Part shown: positions 1,303 through 38,879 of the stretch, in pieces
Layout: the number at the start of each line of letters is the position of its first letter
How positions within the stretch are numbered: the first letter of the stretch is position 1
Source of the DNA: Eutreptiella sp. 'Long Island Sound 2002'
Lineage: Eukaryota > Protista > Euglenida
NCBI GenBank assembly: GCA_964036045.1
Contig: OZ038378.1
Coordinates: 185,132,001 to 185,196,000, forward strand
DNA length: 64,000 nt
Direction: 5' to 3'
Position numbers and translations under genes: made by a program
Notes under the pieces: model-generated
Database searches by the model: none
Told to the model about the DNA's origin: nothing
The model's input: only the letters and a program-made list of their open reading frames with translations

Positions 1303-4300
1303 CCTTCACTGCCAATTTGTTTCTCCCAATTTCCACCCTATGGGAGGAAGGCCACACAAAAGATACACACCCCCAAATACAAAAAAACACCGCAACACAA
1401 AAAACACACGCAACTCCCTAGGGGCTGTAGCTAACGAACGCAGGCGGCTGGTGGCCGAGCCCAAAAGATCAATAGCCAGACAAATCAAAATCTTGGAACC
1501 TCATTTCTACTGCGCTCATTGTTCATTCGTTACGCCGATGCTTTGAAGTAATGCAAAGGAAAGAGACATGCTACAAAGGAAGAGACCTACGATGTTCCAT
1601 ACCATGCTATGCAACGGTGTTGCCTCATCAACGGGACATGACATATTTTGCATTTTCTTCATCGGCTATTTGCAATGCATTGTACTCCGAGCTATCCCCA
1701 TGTTATGGGGCAAGGTGTTCCCATAACCTCGCGTTGGGTGATGGGACCCCCCATAAGGCATTGGTTGAGTAGCCACGTTTCACATATTTGGGTCCCCTAA
1801 GCGGCACCACTTCCAAATGTCTTGTAGACCAAGTGTAGCCTCCAGCACAACACCCAGCATCAAATATCTCACATGCGAGCCTTGTACAAAGCATGAATTT
1901 CAAATGGCTTCGGACCTTGGCGGTCGAGAAAATACCACGCCTTGCCATCCACCCGTGGGACCGCTTATAGTATCCCTTGCTGCATAAACCAGTCGGGATA
2001 GCCATTTATCTCATTGTACTCCTTGCATCCTTCCTTCCTGTCGCCCTGCACAAGCATTTGCACACTCCTTTGTAGCTATGAGTTTTACAAGAAGCTCCCT
2101 ATTGCAAAAGAGGGCAAGATATTTGGTCTTCTAAACAAAAGGTTTTCATGTTGGGGCAAGGGGTCCTTTGTTGTTTGATTTTCATCCCGCGTTGCCTCGT
2201 GGGGACAGTCAAATATAGACCTATTTGCACACATGGGTGGTGTTACAAATTTGTGGCAAATGTTGTCCATGGGCCATTTTCGGCCGTCTGCTTCCGCTTA
2301 CCGTTGGTTTGGGTAGATGAATAGCTCAACTTTGTTTGTGCTGCGTAGCTTTCATAGCCCAACGGGACACATGCAATGATCAATGGAAACCCAGAATAGA
2401 GGCACCTGTAGATGCAGAGTAACGTTGCGCAGTGGCTTTGTGCAGTTGTGGTGTGTAGTGGTGTTGTGTACAAGTTTTGCGTTATGGTGTTGCGGAATGT
2501 TGCGGAGTGGTGTTGCGCAGCAAATTTGGGTTTGCGATGATGATTTTGATCATTCAAAAGGATCGCAACCAGGGCGGCAATACCTTACAACTGGTCCTAG
2601 AACTCATCGTCTTGTTTCCTTTACACTTCCAACAGCCGCTACTCCACCCGATCTTGCTGCCGCTGCAGCCAATCCTGCGCCTGAATGAGAGAAGCCAAGA
2701 GCCGTGATGGGGTAGGGAAGGGACCTTAAGAACCTTTGCTATGATGATTGAATGTCAATTCATAGTTTTGCAGAAAATGGATTAGACTCGGCCTTGAGGC
2801 ATCTTCGCTAATGACATGCGGGTCCCCATGCGGCGCCCCGTCGTGGTGCGACATGAGGCATGGTGACTGAACTGGACGTCCTGCCGGGGCCCATCCTTCT
2901 TCCTTGCCTTGCGCGCCACCTCACACATTTTACTTTTCGATTTCTTGGTGGTTGCACTCGGCACTGCGCCTCCAGCGCCGCGGCGTCACCTGCGACCCCG
3001 TTCGCTTGCGCGTCCTCCTTCCGTGGCCGCCTGGTGCCGTGGCTCCCGTGAACCATCGGAATCATCAAATCATCAATTAATTTCAGCTTGCCCAATTTGC
3101 CCATTAGGTGGAAAACGATGAAAAGCAAAAGCATGTAAGCGTATAGACAAGTAAACAATACTCTTCCTTGCCCCTCCTTCACTGCCAATCTGTTCCTCCC
3201 AATTTCCACCCTATGGGATGAATGCCACACAAAAGATACACACCCCCAAATACAAAAAAACATCGCAACACAAAAAAACCCACGCAACCCGCTAGCGGCT
3301 CTAGCTGACGAACGCAGGCGGCTGGTGGCCGAGCCCAAAAGATCAATAGCCAGACAAATCAAAATCTTGGAACCTCCTTTCTACCGCGCTCATTGTTCAT
3401 TCGTTACGCCGATGCTTTGAAGCAATGCAAAGGAAAGAGACATGCTACAAAGGAAGAGACCTGCGATGTCCCATACCATGCTATGCAACGGTGTTGCCTC
3501 GTCAACGGGACATGCCATGTTTTGCATTTTCTTCATCGGCTACTTGCAATGCATTGTACTCCGAGCTATCCCCATGGTATGGGGCAAGGTATTCCCATAA
3601 CCTCGCGTTGGGTGATGGGACCCCCCATAAGGCATTGGTTGAGTAGCCACGTTTCGCATATTTAGGCCCCCTAAGCGGCACCACTTCTAAATGTCTTGTA
3701 GACCAAGTGTAGCCTCCAACACAACACCCAGCATCAAATATCTCTTTCGCGAGCCTTGTACAAAGCATGAATTTCAAATGGCTTCGGTCCTTGGCGGTCG
3801 AGAAAATACCACGCCTTGTGATCCAAGCGTGGGACCGCTTATAGTATCCCTTGCTGCATAAACTAGTCGGGATAGCCATTTATCTCATTGTACTCCTTGC
3901 ATCCTTCCTTCTTGTTGCCCCGCACAAGCATTTGCACACTCCTTTGTAGCTATGAGTTTTACAAGAAGCTCCCTATTGCAAAAGAGGGCAAGATATTTGG
4001 TCTTCTAAACAGAAGGTGTTCATGTTGGGGCAAGGGGTCCTTTGTTGTTTGATTTTCATCCCGCGTTGCCTCGTGGGGACAGTCAAATATAGACCTATTT
4101 GCACACATGGGTGGTGTTACAAATTTGTGGCACATGTTGTCCATGGGCCATTTTCGGCCGTCTGCTTCCGCTTACCGTTGGTTTGGGTAGATGAATAGCT
4201 CAACTTTGTTTGTGCTGCGTAGCTTTCATAGCCCAACGGGACACATGCAATGACCAATGGAAACCCAGAATAAGGCACTTGCAGATGCAGAGTAACGTTG

Positions 4301-24290: not shown

Positions 24291-24918
24291 TCCTCGTCGT
24301 TCACCGTCGGTGTGGGTTGGGGGTCCGACACGTAAGCCCCCCCCTGTGGCCGTCTGCTTAGCGCCAACCTCCGTCGGTTGGCGGTTGGCCGAATCCTGCC
24401 ACTGATCACCGTCGGCCGTCCCCACTGGACGCAAGGTACAAAAAAAATCTGCTTCCTGAAGGGCAGCGCCGGATGGAACACTGGACTAGCCCCGTGCCGC
24501 AGACCGCGGAGGTGGGCCCCCACACAGTCACCCACGTCAAGCACCTCCTCAGCCCCTCGGCTGATGTATATCGTCTCGTAGTCAGGTCTTGTTCCCCATC
24601 AAGACAGCGGCGCTGTTCACAGTGTCCGTGTGCTCGGGGCCGCGGAACACATGATGGAGCGGGACTGCAGCAGGGCAAACGCGTTCTCGGACTGCAGGGG
24701 TGCTCAGTCCCGTTAGAGTCATTGCCCCCACCCCCGCCAGATGTGTGCAGCTCTTTGAGTAGTTCTGTGCCTCTTCGTCGTTCCGCGATTCCCTGACTCA
24801 TGACCTCTACATCTGGTGCTGCTTCTGCACCGTGGGTGCTGGGGGTGGAGCTGGCTGTACCAGGCAGCGAGGTGGCGTGAAAGCAAAGGCGCCGCCACCC
24901 GCAGGGCGCAGGGCATAC

Positions 24919-25839
24919 CAAGTTGTGACCCATCTGCTCCATCACATGCCCGAGGGCCACTTGCGCATAATAGCCCATCACCTGCATCGGATGCTGCAAG
25001 GCTTCGGGAAGGGGGGCCTCGGTGCTGCGATTGCCGTGCCAGTTCGGGATGCTCATCCCGAACACCACGTTCTCGAGGCCGGGGCAGCCGTGCGCCGCAA
25101 TGCAGTGCCGCGCCACCGCGTCCCAGTGCAGCGCCAAGTCCGCAAACGGCACGAAGAACGTCCAGGGGGAGCCACTGGCAAACGTCAGGAAGTCCATGAC
25201 CTCCTGCTCCGTCCGCAACCCGAACAGCAGCAGCTGCCCCGGCGCTTTGCCGTGCACCTGCGACCACTCCACCCACAAGTCGTCGCCGTACTCGAACACC
25301 GAAGCGACGGCCCCCCCGTGCTCCGCGGTCGCGCGCCGCACCTCCGCCGCGACGCCGGAACTCGAGAACCCGCCGGAACTGGCAGACTCGCCGCGCCGCC
25401 GATCCTCCGCGGGGGTCCGGGGAAGTGCGACGTGCGGCCGGACCGCCCCGGTTGTGTTCCCAAGGAACCGCAGCCAGGCCGCGATCTCCTGCTGCAGTGT
25501 GGGAAAGTTGCGGGGCATCGCCCGCTGGTGCCCGGCGAGGCCGCTCGGCGTCTGCAACGTGGCGAGTACGAGGAACGGGTAGTGGGCCTCCGGGACCGCG
25601 ATGCTGCCAACGAGCGCGCCAGCGTCGGCCACCCCCGCGGCCGCCTCCACCGCTGAAGAGCCGTTGACTGCGGCGTCGTAGCGCCCGGTGACGAGGGCGA
25701 GGGCAGGGTCCTCGCCGTCCGCGCTGTACCGGAGACCCGCGTTGAAGTGCCGCTCCCAAGACGCGGCGTTCGGGTGGCCGAGGGGCAGGAGCTGAACGAA
25801 GCGGAGGGGCTCGGAGTCGTCGTCGTCGTCGTTGTCCAT
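24919..25839 (-). CDS. Receptor-type cyclase-like gene, first recognisable exon: type-1 periplasmic-binding-protein-like ectodomain
   Basis: A GC-rich 921-nt frame. LRFVQLLPLGHPNAASWERHFNAGLRYSA...PTLQQEIAAWLRFL resembles the Leu-binding-like folds of trypanosomatid receptor ACs. Donor TTG|GTATGC is phase 0 and matches exon 2. There is no signal peptide, so an upstream exon may be hidden by a 1-nt deletion near the ATG. Confidence 0.7.
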
Positions 25840-27400: not shown

Positions 27401-30400
27401 TGACCTCTTGTACCGTAAGGTGGGGATGATTGATACCCTAATGCGCTCATTTTCAAGTCGCAAGGGGGGATACGGGCCCAAACGGGTTTGCTGGATTTGC
27501 GGGGTTGCGAGAAGGGGAGAAGGAGAGGCCCGTGCCCTCCATCATCGTGGTGGGGCTGCCAACCCGGCGCCGACTGGCTGGGGCCCGTCAGCCCCTGGGG
27601 ACGTGAGATGGCCTACCACGTGAGGACACATCGCCCCCTCGGTGTGGACGAGGAAACTCAATGCTGCCCCCCAGAATGGGCCGGGGCGCCCCCCTCTGCG
27701 CTTTGGGCCCCACGTGCATGGCCCCGCCCGGGCCCATCACCAACAGTGGAGCCGGATGGTCAAGCCCCACACCGGGCTGCGGTATAGGCAACCCTTGTGC
27801 CACCTGGTCGGCCGTTACGTGGGCTGCGCTGCGAGCTGCTTCCAAGGATGGTGCTGCCACCGCCAAAAGTGGTACCGCCGCCGCACCGAGTGCCACACAG
27901 CCATCTGCACCATTTGTCCCAACTGCCACCACATGAGGCCCCACCGGTGCGTATGCCGGTGTCCCCGTCCCCTGCGGCTCCACCGGTGATACCGCACCTC
28001 CTCCCGGTGCGGCTTGCGACGACAAGGCCTACACTAGGGTGGGGCTGCTGGGGGTGAGCCCACCGGAGGGGGAATATCAGACATTGGTCAGGAAAATTAT
28101 AAACACACTATGCACGGGGCAGAGTATCTAAACTGCAGTTTAGGGTGTCAAGCTTTGGTTTAGTTCAGTTCTTGACCCCAACCCCCGCGGCATGGGCAGG
28201 GGGGTCCAAAGGGGGCTGGTGGGGTTTTTTTCCGGGTTTTGGGGGCATTTTCGAATTTCCTGCTTCATTCTGAGCAATTGAATAAAACAAATCAGGGGGT
28301 ACAATCCCCGTTTACCATTCACCACAGATCGGGGAAAATAGGGGGAAACGGGGGAAGAAATTCTGTGCCCCAGTCCACAGAGGCGAAAAAAATTGTCCGT
28401 GCGCCGCTAGGGCCCAAGACCGTTATTTCCCATTCGTCCACGCACACGCTTTTTCCCTTACTCGGGCTGGCACAGATGTTGCAGTGTTCATATGTTGCAC
28501 CACAGGCCAGACTTACAGGGGTCTTACATGTTGGGCTGGACCCCCAATGTGGCACCACCTAGGCTCTAGGATGGTCAGAGGAGAGTAGAGCCTGACATGT
28601 TGGGACGGAATGGCCAAAACGATGTTATGCTTGTTGCTTGTTGCTGGTTGCTTGCTTGTTAGCTAGATTTATGGGGAGAGGGGTGTGGTAATACGTATTG
28701 GGGGTATGGCCTGTGTAGTTTGCCCTCACTCTGAAGTCCACAGTGGATCACGCAATATACTCACAGGATTCTGGTAAGAAAAGCTTTCAGGCCTGAAAGC
28801 ATCAACACAGTGCCTCCAAAGCCCAAGCCAACCCCCTAAACCGCGCAGCCTTGCATCAAGTATCATCAATCTTGTGCACACCAGCCCTGCGCCCGAAAGT
28901 CAAACCCGACCTCCACGGCCTCCTACATATTTGCAAGCATCATTTGTCTCAGACGCTTGTCTCCGCTTGTCGCACGCAAGAGTGTGTGTCTGTTCATGTT
29001 CTCTGCTTTTCCTTTCGTGTTTTTGTACTCCCCCTTTTGTTAAGCAATGTTTCCTGTTTTCAGTCACCCGACCCGCTGAAACCAGTAGCTGCAGAGCATT
29101 CTGGGCAGCAGGAACAAGTCACTGTGGGCAGTAGCATTGCAACAACGAGCTCAGTTGCAAATGGTTCGTGTTCTCTTTCAGCGACGCCTGAGGCTGCCAA
29201 CACCGGCACGACGCCGGATCTCACTGACATTCTGCAACGCCTCCGGACAGACCGGGACCGATGGATGCCTCCACTACGAGAGAAGCTCAAGCTGCCCAGG
29301 GGTTCTGCCAAGAGGTTTAGACCTTCATGCGTGCTCTGGCTGCCGTCATTGTACTGCCGGTCCCGCGATATTGGGGTTCGGTGGGGGCCGCGGGGGGGGG
29401 GGGGTTAGCAGACCCACCCCAGCACAACCCACACAGGGTGAGCTGCGAGCACGATCCTTGTTCCACCATCCAGATGACTGGAAAACAGGAGAGTCCACGA
29501 GGACAACGCCGCAACTGGCAGTGGGTTGAGCAACGAATCCCTGTGTTGTTAGTCAAGTGCGGGTTAGAGCGCCTGTGTGTACGTCCTTCTGACATTCACG
29601 GGCCCTTCTTGGGCTACCTTTCATAGAGGCGGCTTGGGGGGAACACAGGAAGCCAAGGGTGGTTTGGGGTACCATGGAAAGCGAATAAGAACAGGTAGCC
29701 ACCCGAGAGGACCGAGACAGCACAGCCGGTGGCTCCAGCAAAGCACCATGAATGGCAGAAATATTGCAGGCGGAGAGCCAGGATCCGGTGGTATACGACC
29801 AGGATGACGGAGACACAGCCCAGTGATAGATAGTCGTGCCACAAGGGGGAAGGGGGAGGGGGGCTGTGCATGGGAGGAAGGGGGACGGGTGTCATTGGGG
29901 GGAGGAGTAGCAGTGGTTTGGGGTGAGGGGAGGGGGATCAACCATGGGGCAGGGGTGGGGGAGAGGGGCAGTGGTATAGGGTCAGGGGAGGAGGGTCATG
30001 CGGCAAGGCCGGCAGGCAGTGGCATTGAGGGGACAGGGGGCATAGCCATTTGACGGAGGGGGGCAGTGGCATTTGGGTTGGGAGTGGCTGTGCAGGCAAG
30101 GAGGTGGGGTGGCCTTGCGGGGTGGAGAGCGGGGCAGTGGCATGGATGCCCGTTTCGATACCCCCCCTATCTCGCCACTGGCATAACCTCAGAACATGCC
30201 ACCAAACAAGACTTGCAGGTACCTTTGGGGCTGGAATTCTTGTTTATGGGCAGTTTGGAAGCTCTGCTTTTTGAGTCGTTTCTTGCGTTCTACACGCCTT
30301 CCCGCCCCCTCAGCTCCTCTACTACAACAGCCAACTGTTCCTCCCATTGGTGCAGCTTTCAGAAGGACGCTATCCTGTAGTTTTAGCACGTGCTACGCCA

Positions 30401-31391
30401 AGATGGCATGACGACGCCTTTGCCGCATTCCATGGTCAATGCAAAGACCGCTTCACGGTGTGGGACCAATACAAAAATTGCAGGTCTGCAAAGGAATCGA
30501 CGAGGATGGCCAACCTCAGGCTCCGGTCTGCGAAGCTCACACCCAATCTCCACCCCGTTTTGGGGACCTGGGTTCCCCAAATCAGCCCGAATCAGGGGAT
30601 TTCTGGCTGCAGCGGTAAAAAGGACACTTTAATAAAGGTTCTTGAGTTGTGATGAGAACTACGTCTGTATTGCACTGTGTTGACCTTTTGTTATCCAACA
30701 ATTCTGATGGAAAACTGTGCTGTTTGTGGCAGCATGGGGGTCACCTTGGGCTTGCCGAGTTTGAGGAACAACAACTGGCGTTGCAACAGCGTCTCTGTTG
30801 AGTTCATGGTGTGTGCAGTACCTTCAACCTTCTCCGTTTGTTTTTTGCAACGACAGCTGCAGCCTCATCAGTACAAAGGATCAATGGAAGCAGTGCCAAG
30901 ACTCCTGTCAGGAAAATGAAATCACTGGAACCTAGGCCAGCCGGTGCCAGAATGCATGTTGCTAAACATGTGACGGTGCCCCAACGTGTTGAAAAGCTCA
31001 GTGCCGTAAAGGCTTTTCAAACAAGAGAACTTGTAGCAATGGGCCTGGCCCGCGTCAGTGCTCTGCCCTCTGCGACTGGGTCTTCTTTTTGGTGATGGAC
31101 AGATGTGGAGCCAGTCACAGCCCCGCCCCCAAAAGATTTTTTCTGGTTCTTGTGCAGTTCGGGCCATTAGCAGCCCCGTTGATTGTCGGGATTTTCGAGA
31201 AAAAAGTCGCTCCGTGGTCTGTATGTCATAGTTCAGCAGTTCACTGTCAGAGAGGGGTGGCAGCTGAGTGGTATACACCTGGCATCTAATCCACCTTTTC
31301 CCCAGTATTTGCAAAAGAACAACCATCGGCGTTGCACAGCCCATAGTCAAAGGCAACGCTGACACGCTGACGACTATCAGCAAAGTCCGAA

Positions 31392-32879
31392 TCAATGCGA
31401 AGCGTCGTCGTCATCTGAACTGGACTCAAACAACGGTTGCAACACCCCACAATCCTCCTCCTGCAGCTGCACCTCCTCCTCCTCCTCCTCCTCCTCCTCC
31501 CCCTTCACCCCCGGTCCGGCTACTTGAGCCACTCGGAGCGTGTGCAATATCACCTGCTTCGCCACCTCCCGCCTAAGCACCTCCTCCGGGACGTCATACC
31601 CCGAGAAGGCACAGCCCGGGTTCACTTCATTCACGCACAGTTCCGTTCGGCCCGGGTCCACGAACAGCATGTCGACCCCCGCGTAGAACAGGCCCAGGGC
31701 CCGGGTGGCCGCCACCGCCATCGCCGCGTGCTCCGGGGACAGTCTGTACAGTGGGTCCGTGGTGCGCCCGTCCACGCCGGCACGGAACTCGTCCGCGGAC
31801 CCGGCGATGCGCCGCATGCACTTCACCACCTCCCCGCGCAGCACGAAGGCCCGCACGTCGGTGCCCAGCGAGTGGCGCATGCACTCCTGCAGCACCCACC
31901 CGCGCGCCCACCCCTGCTCCTCGCACCCCGCCATGACGCGGCGCAGGTGCCGCCACAGCGCCGCGCGGTCCTCCACGAGCACCACCCCTTCGCCCCGCGT
32001 CCCGTTCGTCGGCTTCAGCACGCAGGGGAACGTCGGGAACGCGAAGGGGGCGTCGCGCCGCATCGCCTCCGCCCAGTAGTCGAAGTCCACCCGCACGGTC
32101 CGCGGCGTCCGGACGCCCGCCCGGTGGAGCGCCTCGAACGTCGCGAACTTGTCGGCGGCGCGCAGCCGCGACGCGCCGTCGATCACCACGACGCCGTGCT
32201 CGCCGCAGAGCCGCTCCAGCGCCGCGGGCGGGTGGATCGCGAAGTGCGGCACGGCGAACGGCTTCAGGTGCCGGCACGTCCCCGCCATCTCCGCCTCCGT
32301 CTTGACGGCCACCCCCCATTTTTTAAGGAACGAGCGGAAGGCCGAGACCTGTCCGGACCACCCGTGGTAGCCGGGGTACCCGGCGAGATACGCGTCGCAG
32401 CTCAGGTGCGTGACGCCGGGGAAACAGGCGAAGATCGCCGCAACGTCCAGCGCGGGGTAGCCCTTGATCAGGAGGGTGCCCACCGAAGGGCACGAGAGCC
32501 CCTCGGTCAATCGGAGCGCGGGGTTGGCCCCGACGTTCAGCCACTTCAGGCCCGAGAGGTGCCGGATGCCGTCGATGCTCCGCAGCGCGTTGCTGAAGCC
32601 GGACAGGTCGCTGAGGCCCGGCAGGTCGCCGGCGATGAAATCGAAATCGGTCAGGCCGTTCCAGTCCAGGTAGAGCTTCCGCAGCGAGGGCAGCTCGCAA
32701 ATCCGCGCCAGCCCGGGGCTCTGGGACGTGATTCCGGCCGAGCACAGGATCAGACAGTCCAGGCCACGGTACTGGGCAGGCTCGAAGCGGAACGGACCGC
32801 GCTCGGGGGCTCGAGCGTGGCTGCTGCAATCGCCTTCGTCTGCGGGCGTTGGGTGCGGCTCCATGACGGCCACCACCAT
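31392..32879 (-). CDS. Intronless leucine-rich-repeat / RimK-family ATP-grasp ligase fusion protein (495 aa)
   Basis: N-terminal LRRs: LPSLRKLYLDWNGL, LPGLSDLSGFSNAL, LSGLKWLNVGANP. RimK/LysX motifs: AADKFATFEAL..AGVRTPRT, FPCVLKPTNGTRGEGVVLV, VLQEC, DVRAFV, LGLFYAGVDML, VNEVNP. Acidic tail, strong GC3 bias, TGA stop. Confidence 0.92.
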   Translation of the reverse strand: MVVAVMEPHPTPADEGDCSSHARAPERGPFRFEPAQYRGLDCLILCSAGITSQSPGLARICELPSLRKLYLDWNGLTDFDFIAGDLPGLSDLSGFSNALRSIDGIRHLSGLKWLNVGANPALRLTEGLSCPSVGTLLIKGYPALDVAAIFACFPGVTHLSCDAYLAGYPGYHGWSGQVSAFRSFLKKWGVAVKTEAEMAGTCRHLKPFAVPHFAIHPPAALERLCGEHGVVVIDGASRLRAADKFATFEALHRAGVRTPRTVRVDFDYWAEAMRRDAPFAFPTFPCVLKPTNGTRGEGVVLVEDRAALWRHLRRVMAGCEEQGWARGWVLQECMRHSLGTDVRAFVLRGEVVKCMRRIAGSADEFRAGVDGRTTDPLYRLSPEHAAMAVAATRALGLFYAGVDMLFVDPGRTELCVNEVNPGCAFSGYDVPEEVLRREVAKQVILHTLRVAQVAGPGVKGEEEEEEEEEVQLQEEDCGVLQPLFESSSDDDDASH

Positions 32880-32900
32880 TGGGCCTCAAGGAGACGATGA

Positions 32901-32960
32901 CTGCACACAACGCCGCCGCATTGTAAACATGAGCAAGAGCAAAGACTTGGAAGAGATGAA
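32901..32960 (-). promoter_or_regulatory. Pyrimidine tract and AG acceptor 21 nt upstream of the LRR-RimK ATG (candidate spliced-leader acceptor)
   Basis: Minus strand ...TCTTTGCTCTTGCTCATGTTTACAATGCGGCGGCGTTGTGTGCAG|TCATCGTCTCCTTGAGGCCCA-ATG. Confidence 0.4.
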
Positions 32961-34690
32961 AACGAGTTCAGGGGGATGACTTTCTCCCAGCATCGCCATG
33001 TTCACACCCCATGCCCCTGCCCCTGCCCCCTTACCGTCACCCTTGCCGTTTCCGCTCCTCCTTCTTCCTACTCTGCCCCCCCTTTGATATCCCCACCCCT
33101 TTTGTGCGACGACAGCCCCCCCCTCCCCCCCCTCCCCCCGGTCGGGAGAACGGTCATCAAGTGATGGTTCCCGAAACCACCCCCCGAGGGAATTGCACCA
33201 CTAAACAGCACCAAGGAGGAGTGTTTGCCAAGCGCGTGTGCAGCACGCTACCCTTGGGCAATTGTCCAGGACTTTAGATCCGGATTTATCATCCCCTTGA
33301 GCAGCCTCCAAGCACATCAGTAGAATGGCCCCCGTTTTAGCCAAATCAACTCCAAAACCATCCCTGCAGAGCACACAACAGAATAGCAAATCTGTCAACT
33401 CAAATTGCAGCAGAAATGCTAAAGAATCCCTGCCGTTCCCCAGGGCGGGGAGCTCTTGGATAGCACTTGGTATAGCACTGGTCAGGGGCGTTCGGCCTGA
33501 AAAGATGCCCGGCGCGCACATGGCGCACTAACCTTCCCTCCAACGTGTGAACCTCGCAATGCATACAACGAAACCACATGTGTATTTGTCAAATGCAAAG
33601 TCATTGAATATACTGGCCTGCAAAGATGCCGAGTATTGCACCAAATATGATCGCCTTTGCAGAGAATGCATGGTGTACATGCATGTCGCCCTTGCAACAT
33701 AACCAGTAGGCGCAGCAGGTCGTCCAACCCTGAGACGGTCTTGGCGCACTGTGCGCGCACGGTGCAGTGTTCTTGAGAACAATGTATGGTTCCGCCCCTG
33801 AAAACCTGCTACCCCAGCCCCCCCTTGAAATCTCCCCCCTAATGTTGTGACGGTTCTCCCACCGGGGGGGGGGTGATTGCACCACACAACGGTAGCACTA
33901 AAACTGCAGCAATTCCAGTATAATCTAAAGAAAAGTTTCTCTTTGGCGTCTAGTATTTTCTCTGCTTTTGGGGCGAAGTGATGGGTTCCCCCCCAAGGAG
34001 GGGGGGGGGGGGACCCCAAATAGGTCCCAAGAGGAACCAAAAACGGATGTGTAGTTCCTGGATGGTTGCTGTTGATTCCTGGGGTTTTGGGTGGTTGCTA
34101 GTGGGGAGCTTTGGTCAAGCTTTGGTAGAGGGCTTCTTACTCACAGCCATAGAGTATGAATTAAAACTAGGCTCAGGCCGCCAAGCCGGGATCCATACAC
34201 AGGATGCGATTGAAACTTCTCTCAGATTCTTGGAACATGGTGGAAGACCTATATGCCTTGTGAATACCGACCCCATGTTGGTGCCATTGTCTGGTCCCCA
34301 AGAGATACAAACCTCAGAATGATTGCCATGTCGGGCTGATCATTTTGAGGAAAAGTTGGTGTGGGACAAAATTTTTCTTTCGCGTCTAGAAGGCTCCATT
34401 CACAGGATTTTTCTCTATCTCTGTTGTCGCCCGCGTAACCCATTACATCACGCTGGACCCCACACGTCACACTTACGCCAACCACAACAGACCACGACAG
34501 ATGACTGATTGATTGCCCATTGGGCGTGGCAGGTACGACTGCACTATTAGAAGGGTAAACACATTCTATGGCTGTACGATGCTTAGACCACAGGTCCGCT
34601 CGGTTTCGGGGGGCACTAGTACTGTACATAAATGGACCTTCTGCTTTCTGGGGTTCTCCTGAGTACACCTTGAGCGTCGGTAACTAAAAA

Positions 34691-34912
34691 AAAAAACATA
34701 AACGGTCGGCACCTAGGGTAGATCTTGAACATGCGAGGTGGAAGAAATGTTCCAGGGGGGGGGGGGGGTTCTGAAAAAAGGGGCTCAAAGGTTGGAACTG
34801 TTCAAGTGAACATTGCTGCTGAAGGGGCTGGGAGACATGCCCCAGCCCTTTATGTCGCCTACAACAAAAGCCAAAGGCACGATACCCAGTGAGTTGACCG
34901 TTTATGTTTTTT
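34691..34912. repeat. Perfect 17-bp inverted repeat pair enclosing ~190 bp (MITE-like)
   Basis: AAAAAACATAAACGGTC (34691-34707) and GACCGTTTATGTTTTTT (34896-34912). No clear TSD. Confidence 0.6.
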
Positions 34913-38189: not shown

Positions 38190-38879
38190 TCAACAAACAG
38201 CCTTGTCCCCGCAGGTGTGCATATCAATGCATTCCGCACAATAATTCAAATGGCATTCACCACAAACGGTTGTAGTGTGCTTGCGGCAGCACAATGCACA
38301 CACATCCACCTCCTCCCCAACATCATCTTGCGTGGCAGCCTCAACAAGTTCCTCCGCACTCTTCCAAACATGAGGGGGTACATGTTCCCACGGTCCGTAG
38401 GGAGGGTAACGGACCTGCCTCCGGATGCAGAAGTGCGTAAAATGCAACAAAACTCGTACAGATTGATGCAACTCATTGGGGCCGCCACGCCAAATGTTCC
38501 GAACCAAACCCCAATGCCATAAATGAGCGAACAATTGCTCAATTCGGGCCCGATACCATCCATGCACATCATTATAGCACTGCTGCCGTGCGGTGAGCCC
38601 ATCATTCTTCCGGCCAATGAATGGCACAATGACATGCAAACGGCCTTTGTAGGCCCCATCATGGCCCCCGACCTCAAAATCAAAAAACTCTCCTCGTGTT
38701 CGGGAAGGTCCATAACCATCCCATATCAACACGTCAGCGGAGGTGCCGGGGGCCAAGGGACAAATCCATATTATATTGCCCAACATATCAATGGCAACAG
38801 TCACCTTGTAAATATGACCTACGTACTTTGGATTCCAAAGGTCAACGGACCATATTCCTCCAATGGAGCTTATTGGCAT
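38190..38879 (-). mobile_element. 5'-truncated PIF/Harbinger-type (DDE_Tnp_4-like) transposase with a C-terminal B-box-like Zn finger
   Basis: Motifs: LWNPKYVGHIYKVTVAIDMLGNIIW, GHDGAYKG (second Asp) and YNDVHGWYRARIEQLFAHL (Glu). The first Asp is absent. The tail is CALC-x8-CGEC-x4-CAEC-x3-HTC. Confidence 0.85.

What the first reader, a model, noticed from the sequence alone, without database searches (positions are those of the whole stretch)
31392..32879. LRR fused to a RimK-type ATP-grasp ligase in one intronless eukaryotic ORF
Seen: about 5-6 LRRs followed by a complete ATP-grasp core (KP..G..G.G, QE, D.R, GVD, EVN) and an acidic tail. Known: RimK, LysX and RIMKLA/B are stand-alone amino-acid ligases. 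Here the E. coli RimK loop FRSNLHRGG reads FRAGVDGRT and the usual N-terminal domain looks replaced or diverged. Inference: a substrate-targeted peptide or glutamate ligase in which the LRR recruits a protein substrate, possibly a new post-translational modification enzyme. Lacking introns next to intron-rich genes suggests HGT or retroposition. I do not know this architecture from characterised proteins, but I could not search.
Basis: partly seen in the sequence, partly recalled or inferred. Interest (0 to 1): 0.8.

Follow-up and report, generated by a model that had tools for sequence, protein, structure and literature searches.

The report
LRR-plus-RimK ligase gene, euglenid orphan
A single-exon gene of a euglenid alga joins a six-repeat leucine-rich "gripping" domain to a bacterial-type (RimK/LysX family) ATP-driven amino-acid ligase. 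I found this combination in no other sequenced organism, but one normally invariant active-site loop is altered and nothing yet shows that the gene is used.

Summary
Window 31392-32879 (-) is an intact 495-codon ORF. It encodes six internalin/SDS22-type LRRs (res ~36-165), a truncated pre-ATP-grasp domain (~166-240), a RimK/LysX-type ATP-grasp module (241-430; Pfam RimK E 2.6e-18; AF2 pLDDT ~90; Foldseek top hits LysX/RimK/ArgX) and an acidic tail with an E9 run.

All ATP/Mg template residues are kept. The near-universal Asn and Gly-Gly of the "FRxN...GG" lower ATP-binding loop are lost, as are RimK's poly-Glu-binding arginines. RimK-like chemistry on a different substrate is plausible, and a pseudo-enzyme is possible.

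An exhaustive HMMER pass over 1.84 billion representative proteins found no full-length relative and no LRR+RimK fusion among the 150 best hits listed. The gene is single-copy and is the genome's only RimK hit.

Precedents exist for the idea: plant TTLL12-like LRR-SET-TTL proteins and haptophyte HEAT-RimK proteins.

The host is a euglenid, probably Eutreptiella. Intronless genes are common there, codon use is host-like and there is no retrocopy scar, so the "HGT or retroposition" inference is unsupported.

Expression is unproven: the only RNA trace is one 244-nt metatranscriptome contig in the 3' flank.

Verdict: a real, new domain-architecture variant of a known enzyme kind, of moderate interest.

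The parts
31392..32879 (-). Whole ORF, 495 codons plus stop (stop at 31392-31394), single exon
   Evidence: the only stretch with strong GC3 periodicity within about 5 kb on either side; single copy in the genome
32775..32879 (-). N-terminal ~35 residues, low complexity, predicted disordered, no hydrophobic signal
   Evidence: pLDDT 37-45; GC3 0.77
32385..32774 (-). LRR domain, res ~36-165: six 22-23-residue repeats of internalin/SDS22/Roco type. Three have the canonical Asn (DWNGL, FSNAL, GANPA); three are degenerate
32160..32384 (-). Truncated, diverged pre-ATP-grasp (RimK N) domain, res ~166-240. It has two deletions relative to RimK. The counterparts of RimK R8, R64 and S68 are not kept
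   Evidence: alignment; (local homology back to res 185); low pLDDT 35-66; Pfam Rimk_N not detected
31590..32159 (-). RimK/LysX-type ATP-grasp catalytic module, res 241-430, with K244, K289, G293/G296/G298, Q331-E332, D341, R343, R357, D403, E418 and N420
31758..31787 (-). Altered 'lower ATP-binding loop', res 365-374 (FRAGVDGRTT). R366 is kept. The Asn (99% conserved) is Gly at 368, and the Gly-Gly is Arg-Thr at 372-373
   Evidence: role of this loop and of N213 in E. coli RimK from PMC10375531
31395..31589 (-). C-terminal helix (res 433-454) and disordered acidic tail; E9 run at res 461-469 (31473-31499, a GAG repeat) and a DDDD near the end
31051..31294 (.). 3' flank, 98-341 nt past the stop. 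It is matched exactly by one 244-nt contig of an estuary metatranscriptome run, which is the only RNA-library trace. It is possibly a 3' UTR; the strand is unknown
   Evidence: X1 record 1, 0 differences; unique at 100% in the genome, other copies at most 85%

Best explanation
This is a genuine single-exon nuclear gene of a euglenid alga. The one polypeptide has four parts: a six-repeat LRR solenoid, a shortened pre-ATP-grasp domain, a RimK/LysX-type ATP-grasp module and an acidic tail.

Shown: the architecture, the fold, retention of every residue of the ATP-grasp ATP/Mg/acyl-phosphate template, host-like codon use, single copy, and absence of any full-length relative.

Inferred: the protein binds ATP and activates a carboxylate as an acyl-phosphate, as RimK, LysX/ArgX and TTL do. 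This is most likely the acidic C-terminus or side chain of a protein or peptide. It then ligates an amine to it.

The residues that give RimK its glutamate and poly-glutamate specificity are gone: the Asn and Gly-Gly of the lower ATP-binding loop, R8/R64 in the N domain, and R98/R102 of the basic belt. The substrate pair is therefore not RimK's.

The LRR concave face is the most likely partner-recruiting or regulatory module, by analogy with the non-catalytic targeting domains of TTLLs.
For: - Intact ORF with in-phase GC3 of 0.90 across all domains.
- Pfam RimK E 2.6e-18, rimK_fam E 6.6e-29, PDB RimK E 5e-13.
- AF2 pLDDT ~90 for res 230-430, and Foldseek top hits LysX, RimK and ArgX at E 1e-14 to 1e-15, TM (target) 0.64-0.79.
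- All invariant or near-invariant ATP-grasp columns of 76 relatives are kept: K244, P285, K289, G293, G296, V299, Q331, G339, D341, R343, R357, D403, E418, N420. They match the superfamily template described in PMC4431377.
- R343 is the counterpart of RimK R189, LysX/ArgX R173 and TTL R202, which hold the C-terminal carboxylate of the acidic protein substrate (PMC10375531).
- The LRR solenoid is confidently modelled and internalin-like.
- DNA reads of three runs from two studies cross both ORF borders at flank-level depth, and an independent 818-kb ENA contig carries the same gene.
- Codon preferences are host-like.
- Unchecked notes of this scan list several other LRR fusions in the same genome.
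Against: - No transcript evidence over the ORF. The only RNA-library trace is a 244-nt contig in the 3' flank.
- The exact protein is on record only from a genome assembly. TTL control genes are too, so this is weak.
- No orthologue exists anywhere, so purifying selection cannot be measured.
- The Asn present in 75 of 76 relatives, and the Gly-Gly, are lost from a loop that touches the ATP gamma-phosphate in E. coli RimK.
- The rimK_fam score of 101 bits is below the 143-bit cut-off.
- Nothing tested here shows that the LRR binds a substrate.
Confidence: 0.4

Rival explanations
1. An unused ORF: a young chimeric gene or a slowly decaying relic that is not expressed and has no function.
For: - Orphan with no orthologue or paralogue.
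- No transcript-derived protein on record and no RNA contig over the ORF.
- Loss of a 99%-conserved Asn and of the Gly-Gly.
- Degenerate N domain.
- Gene-poor, repeat-rich surroundings with a DDE_Tnp_4 remnant 5.3 kb upstream.
Against: - 495 codons without a stop or frameshift, with GC3 0.90 against about 0.52-0.55 GC in the flanks. Neutral decay would erase both.
- Every ATP/Mg template residue is kept despite at most 39% identity to any relative.
- High-confidence fold.
- Exact metatranscriptome match in the 3' flank.
Confidence: 0.25
2. A pseudo-enzyme. The ATP-grasp module still folds and may bind nucleotide but no longer ligates. The protein acts as an LRR-based scaffold or ATP sensor, as has been proposed for TTLL12.
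For: [quoted passage not shown]
- Loss of the RimK substrate-binding arginines.
- TTLL12 is described in the literature as a possible pseudo-enzyme (abstract of PMC5112610).
Against: - All phosphate, Mg and acyl-phosphate residues (K244, K289, R343, D403, E418, N420) are kept, which is unusual for a dead enzyme.
- One natural relative, P0034, also lacks the Asn, and the nearest kin show looser loops, so the loop is variable in this branch.
Confidence: 0.15
3. A small-molecule amidoligase like RIMKLA/B (NAAG or beta-citrylglutamate), MptN or CofF. The LRR serves localisation, oligomerisation or regulation rather than substrate capture.
For: - The RimK family includes many metabolite ligases. 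NCBIfam hits include MptN E 4.8e-20 and CofF E 1.5e-3.
- The nearest relative P0029 sits beside a second RimK-like gene and an MFS transporter in a bacterial operon-like context, which suggests small-molecule chemistry.
Against: - None of the equivalog models comes near its cut-off.
- Fusion to a protein-protein interaction scaffold, and retention of the Arg that holds a protein C-terminus in RimK, LysX and TTL, fit a macromolecular substrate as well or better.
Confidence: 0.15
4. Assembly artefact or bacterial contamination inserted in the scaffold.
For: Bacterial-type enzyme family, no introns, very high GC3.
Against: - Contigs from DNA runs of two studies bridge the ORF into both flanks at the same depth as the flanks: X2 31514-33381, X5 29930-31451 and 31514-33026.
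- An independent 818-kb contig carries it.
- Codon preferences are like host genes, with frequent GGG and CGG.
- The best bacterial identity is only 37-39%.
Confidence: 0.02

Closest known systems
RimK (ribosomal protein S6--L-glutamate ligase; PDB 4iwx, 5zct, 7qyr)
   Same: Best sequence and fold match for res ~220-430. Same ATP/Mg template, and same Arg (R343 = RimK R189) that holds the acceptor carboxylate. A pre-ATP-grasp domain precedes the catalytic module.
   Different: Only 33-40% identity. The FRSNLHRGG loop reads FRAGVDGRT. R8, R64, R98 and R102 of the glutamate-binding sites and belt are absent. The N domain is truncated. An N-terminal LRR and an acidic tail are added. rimK_fam is below its cut-off. 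Eukaryotic host.
LysX / ArgX (LysW-dependent amino-group carrier ligases; PDB 3vpd, 3vpb, 5k2m)
   Same: Top Foldseek hits. Enzymes of the same clade that act on the acidic C-terminus of a partner protein.
   Different: LysX_arch scores 55 bits against a cut-off of 276. There is no evidence of a LysW-like partner. Partner recognition in LysX is by the catalytic domains, not by an added LRR.
RIMKLA / RIMKLB (animal NAAG and beta-citrylglutamate synthases)
   Same: Eukaryotic members of the RimK family.
   Different: They are stand-alone metabolite ligases without an LRR. No specific relationship was seen here: the query sits alone on the tree.
Plant TTLL12-like proteins (LRR_4 + SET_TTL + TTL)
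   Same: A known architecture in which an N-terminal LRR is fused to an ATP-grasp amino-acid-ligase-type domain. These were the nearest ESM-Atlas feature neighbours (score 0.77, a lead only).
   Different: The catalytic domain is TTL (PF03133), which the query does not match. A SET-like domain lies between. They are conserved across plants, whereas the query is an orphan.
Haptophyte / Tara HEAT-repeat + RimK proteins (P0056 cluster, Phaeocystis antarctica P0181)
   Same: A eukaryotic-algal RimK-type ATP-grasp preceded by a protein-interaction repeat scaffold.
   Different: HEAT repeats, not LRR. They keep the canonical FRSN...GG loop. About 30-34% identity and no supported grouping with the query.

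Membership tests
ATP-grasp superfamily (template of PMC4431377) | Lys in the linker between the pre-ATP-grasp and RAGNYA domains | tested here: met
   K244, in a column that is 99% K in 76 relatives
ATP-grasp superfamily (template of PMC4431377) | Lys at the end of RAGNYA strand 2, followed by the ssxGbGl glycine loop | tested here: met
   K289 (invariant column), G293, G296, G298, V299
ATP-grasp superfamily (template of PMC4431377) | Acidic residue in strand 4 of the kinase-like domain, and an ExN motif at the end of strand 5 | tested here: met
   D403, E418-V-N420, all invariant columns
ATP-grasp superfamily (template of PMC4431377) | [quoted passage not shown] | tested here: met
   R343 in D341-x-R343, an invariant column. 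It aligns with R189 of 7qyr
RimK family (Pfam PF08443 / TIGR00768) | Score above the curated family cut-off | tested here: inconclusive
   PF08443 scores 66.7 bits against a cut-off of 21: met. TIGR00768 scores 101.1 bits against a cut-off of 143.4: not met. No equivalog model comes near its cut-off
RimK family | RimK pre-ATP-grasp domain (PF18030) | tested here: inconclusive
   No Pfam hit. Alignment shows a shortened homologous region, res ~166-240, with two deletions
RimK family | (F/W)(R/K)xN...G(G/A) lower ATP-binding loop | tested here: not met
   N is G at 368, and GG is R-T at 372-373. Of 76 relatives, 75 have the Asn
RimK proper (S6 poly-glutamylase) | Basic belt and glutamate sites (R8, R64, R96, R98, R102) | tested here: not met
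   Only the R96 counterpart (R240) is kept. R98 and R102 are Ala. R8 and R64 have no counterpart. Residue roles are from PMC10375531 and PMC10092738
RimK proper (S6 poly-glutamylase) | ATP-dependent alpha-L-glutamate ligation; tetramer | not testable with these tools
   Needs biochemistry. Oligomer prediction was not run
Leucine-rich repeat (internalin/SDS22-like 22-residue class) | Tandem LxxLxLxxNxL repeats forming a solenoid | tested here: met
   Pfam matches are below cut-off. However, PDB phmmer gives E 4e-7, the register is clear in A4, AF2 gives pLDDT 80-95 with six strands, and Foldseek matches internalin, Roco and SDS22
TTL / TTLL family (PF03133) | Match to the TTL domain model | tested here: not met
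   No PF03133 hit at E up to 1, although the genome has at least 63 TTL-matching segments elsewhere

The most novel reading that the evidence does not exclude
The protein is an active, LRR-targeted protein-modifying ligase. It would be a euglenid-specific enzyme that uses a RimK-type ATP-grasp core with a remodelled nucleophile and phosphate loop to add a non-glutamate amino acid (or a short chain) to the acidic C-terminus or a side chain of one specific partner protein held by the LRR. This would be a new post-translational modification system that arose in parallel with the TTLLs.
Probability: 0.15. Interest if true: 0.7.

Novelty: new variant of a known kind. Interest (0 to 1): 0.4.

Why it matters
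RimK-family ligases are known as stand-alone enzymes that extend acidic protein tails or make small acidic peptides. In eukaryotes, protein-tail ligation is the province of the related TTL family, whose specificity comes from added targeting domains.

A RimK-type core hard-wired to an LRR would be an independent invention of the same design. It would also give a clean test case for how a recognition scaffold retargets an ATP-grasp ligase.

It adds one more example of the very free shuffling of LRR modules that this scan has noted in this euglenid genome. If it proves unexpressed or dead, it is simply one lineage-specific domain shuffle among many.

Tried and rejected
1. Transcript check. Splicing, ends and expression could not be settled.

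2. First AF2 job with alignment A1. MAFFT had spread the RimK N domains over the LRR region, so the LRR came out as low-confidence helices. I rejected that part and redid it with an LRR-only alignment, A4.

3. Alignment A3, which combined RimK parts and LRR segments, put the LRR segments on the ATP-grasp region. I discarded it.

5. The tree of 183 ATP-grasp modules has the query on a lone branch (length 0.91) with no supported clade. No donor can be named.

I revised this for three reasons. A control BiP ORF is 100% identical to a UniRef entry labelled Eutreptiella gymnastica. Contig 1 exceeds 185 Mb, whereas the largest published E. gracilis chromosome is 121 Mb. The exact RNA match is from an estuary.

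7. Retroposition signs: no leader remnant within 3 mismatches in the window, no poly(A), no flanking direct repeats.

8. PADLOC defence models: no hit. Literature searches for RimK with LRR and for Euglena with RimK found nothing relevant.

Full report
**What is there.** Window 31392-32879 on the minus strand is one open frame of 495 codons starting two codons after an in-frame stop. It is not a chance frame. Shuffles of its own bases never reached that length (0 of 300). Third-position GC is 0.90 against 0.49 at second positions, and it holds at 0.93-0.95 through the LRR, middle and ATP-grasp parts alike. Between 20 and 46 kb of the window, only this ORF and one other ORF (24.9-25.8 kb) show such periodicity. 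The gene is therefore an isolated single coding block with no neighbouring exons in sight.

**Catalytic half.**
- Pfam RimK (PF08443) matches res 241-423 at E 2.6e-18.
- NCBIfam rimK_fam matches res 223-428 at E 6.6e-29, but below its cut-off (101 against 143 bits). MptN, LysX and E. coli RimK equivalogs score far below theirs.
- Against PDB sequences the best matches are Pseudomonas RimK (E 5e-13), E. coli RimK and Thermus LysX.
- AF2 gives pLDDT about 90 for res 230-430. Foldseek ranks LysX, RimK and ArgX first (E 1e-14 to 1e-15, TM by target 0.64-0.79).

**Active-site residues.** In an alignment with 76 relatives, every invariant or near-invariant column of the ATP/Mg/acyl-phosphate machinery is kept: K244, P285, K289, G293, G296, V299, Q331, G339, D341, R343, R357, D403, E418 and N420. 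These are the positions that define the ATP-grasp template in PMC4431377.

The exceptions are concentrated in one loop:
- The Asn of (F/W)(R/K)xN is Gly368. It is 99% conserved, present in 75 of 76 relatives.
- The following Gly-Gly is Arg372-Thr373.
- In E. coli RimK this is the "lower ATP-binding loop" (res 204-218), whose N213 approaches the gamma-phosphate and the upper loop on closure (PMC10375531).

One natural relative (P0034) shows a similar loss, and the nearest relatives have looser loops, so the loop is evolvable in this branch.

**The region before the catalytic module.** Local alignments to RimK proteins reach back to query res 185-210. [quoted passage not shown] The N domain is thus shortened and diverged, not replaced.

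The residues that bind poly-glutamate or the incoming glutamate in RimK have no conserved counterpart. These are S7, R8, S14, R64 and S68 in PMC10092738, and R8 and R64 plus the R96/R98/R102 belt in PMC10375531. Only the R96 counterpart (R240) remains; R98 and R102 are Ala. By contrast R343 is kept. It equals RimK R189, LysX/ArgX R173 and TTL R202, which hold the C-terminal carboxylate of the acidic protein substrate.

**LRR half.**
- The Pfam LRR models are sub-threshold.
- phmmer finds the Chlorobium Roco LRR (E 4e-7) and internalins. In the 1.84-billion library it finds an LRR array protein at E 2.2e-26 through 11 repeated matches to query res ~53-143.
- Aligned to 21 LRR segments, the register is plain, with canonical Asn in three repeats.
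- With that alignment AF2 models res ~35-165 at pLDDT 80-95, with six strands spaced 22-23 residues apart.
- Foldseek returns internalin A/B, Roco and SDS22.
- The first full-length model had a poor LRR only because its alignment was wrong there.

**Tail.** Res 431-495 carry 20 acidic residues, including an E9 run encoded by a GAG repeat.

**Host and gene status.**
- The genome is 2.28 Gb.
The dinoflagellate leader occurs 0 times.
- A control BiP ORF is identical over 655 residues to a UniRef entry labelled Eutreptiella gymnastica.
- Contig 1 is longer than any chromosome of the published E. gracilis assembly.
- I therefore call the host a euglenid, probably Eutreptiella.

The gene is single-copy and is the only PF08443 match in the genome. 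It is not contamination. DNA-run contigs from two studies bridge both ORF borders at the depth of the flanks, and an independent 818-kb contig carries it.

Full-length HSP70 and TTL domains lie in single open frames at many loci, so intronless genes are ordinary here. Codon preferences correlate with those host genes (r 0.745), including frequent GGG and CGG, although GC3 is at the upper end of their range of 0.55-0.85. There is no leader remnant, poly(A) tract or target-site duplication.

**Relatives and origin.**
- The exhaustive search found 2,051 hits at E up to 1e-3, but only the query itself below 1e-30.
- Apart from the query itself, the 150 hits listed are stand-alone RimK-like proteins (33-43% identity over res ~220-430), three pure LRR proteins, or other fusions: Zn-protease, GH3, HEAT.
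- Word searches with the whole protein and with the LRR region alone found no closer kin.
- On a tree of 183 ATP-grasp modules the query is a lone branch without a supported sister.
- One near relative lies in a bacterial operon-like context beside a second RimK-like gene and an MFS transporter.
- The ultimate origin is probably bacterial, as for the family in general. No donor or date can be given.

**Precedents.**
- A Phaeocystis/Tara cluster has HEAT repeats in front of a RimK domain.
- The nearest ESM-Atlas feature neighbours are plant TTLL12-like clusters carrying LRR_4 + SET_TTL + TTL (score 0.77, a lead only).
- Unchecked notes of this scan list LRR fusions to McrB-like, phytochrome/F-box and helicase-like modules in the same genome.

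So "recognition repeat plus ATP-grasp ligase" is a known design. LRR plus a RimK-type core is, as far as these searches go, new.

**Expression.** This is unresolved. Three holders are DNA-like. The only RNA run, an estuary metatranscriptome, has one 244-nt contig identical to 31051-31294, which lies 98-341 nt past the stop. That stretch is unique at 100% in the genome, although it belongs to a low-copy repeat family. The exact protein is on record only from a genome assembly, but so are TTL control genes. A pyrimidine-rich tract followed by AG at 32901-32902 upstream of the ATG would suit trans-splicing, but this is read from the sequence only.

**Reading.** The most likely case (0.4) is a functional, lineage-specific ATP-grasp carboxylate-amine ligase whose substrate differs from RimK's, with the LRR acting as the partner-binding module. 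The rivals are:
- an unused or decaying ORF (0.25);
- a pseudo-enzyme or scaffold (0.15);
- a metabolite ligase with a regulatory LRR (0.15);
- an artefact (0.02).

It is a new variant of a known kind and of moderate interest until expression and activity are shown.

Noticed in passing
window 24406-25839 (-): A second isolated 477-codon ORF with strong GC3 periodicity (about 0.9 over 24921-25839). It has no Pfam hit and is on record only from the genome assembly.
   Followed up: partly
window 38190-38879 (-): A 229-aa ORF matching the DDE_Tnp_4 transposase domain (E 3e-7), about 5.3 kb upstream of the gene. Probably a Harbinger/PIF-type remnant.
   Followed up: partly
window 29388-29410, 33105-33136, 33859-34024, 34752-34774: Poly-G/poly-C tracts of 10-16 bases flank the gene. 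DNA-run contigs pile up there (summed depth up to about 2,800-3,500 against a base of 19-32) and show many chimeric joints between these tracts. This is a genome-wide simple repeat that breaks short-read assembly.
   Followed up: no
window 31111-31294: The 3' flank belongs to a dispersed low-copy repeat family: 12 other matches in the genome at 70-85% identity, the two best on the same contig.
   Followed up: partly
L009 (G000:C413:14178-15794): A full-length HSP70/DnaK ORF with GC3 of only 0.11, against 0.55-0.85 for the other host genes sampled. Contig C413 may be a bacterial associate or contaminant, or an organelle-like sequence, within the assembly.
   Followed up: no
G000 genome-wide; L007:1423-3387: The euglenid spliced-leader 24-mer occurs about 5,458 times. 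A BiP-type HSP70 ORF is 100% identical to UniRef A0A7S4GGM1, labelled Eutreptiella gymnastica, so the genome is probably that species rather than Euglena gracilis.
   Followed up: partly
P0056 / P0181 (Phaeocystis antarctica and Tara Oceans proteins): Eukaryotic-algal proteins of 547-742 aa with N-terminal HEAT repeats fused to a RimK ATP-grasp domain that keeps the canonical loop. This architecture seems uncharacterised.
   Followed up: partly
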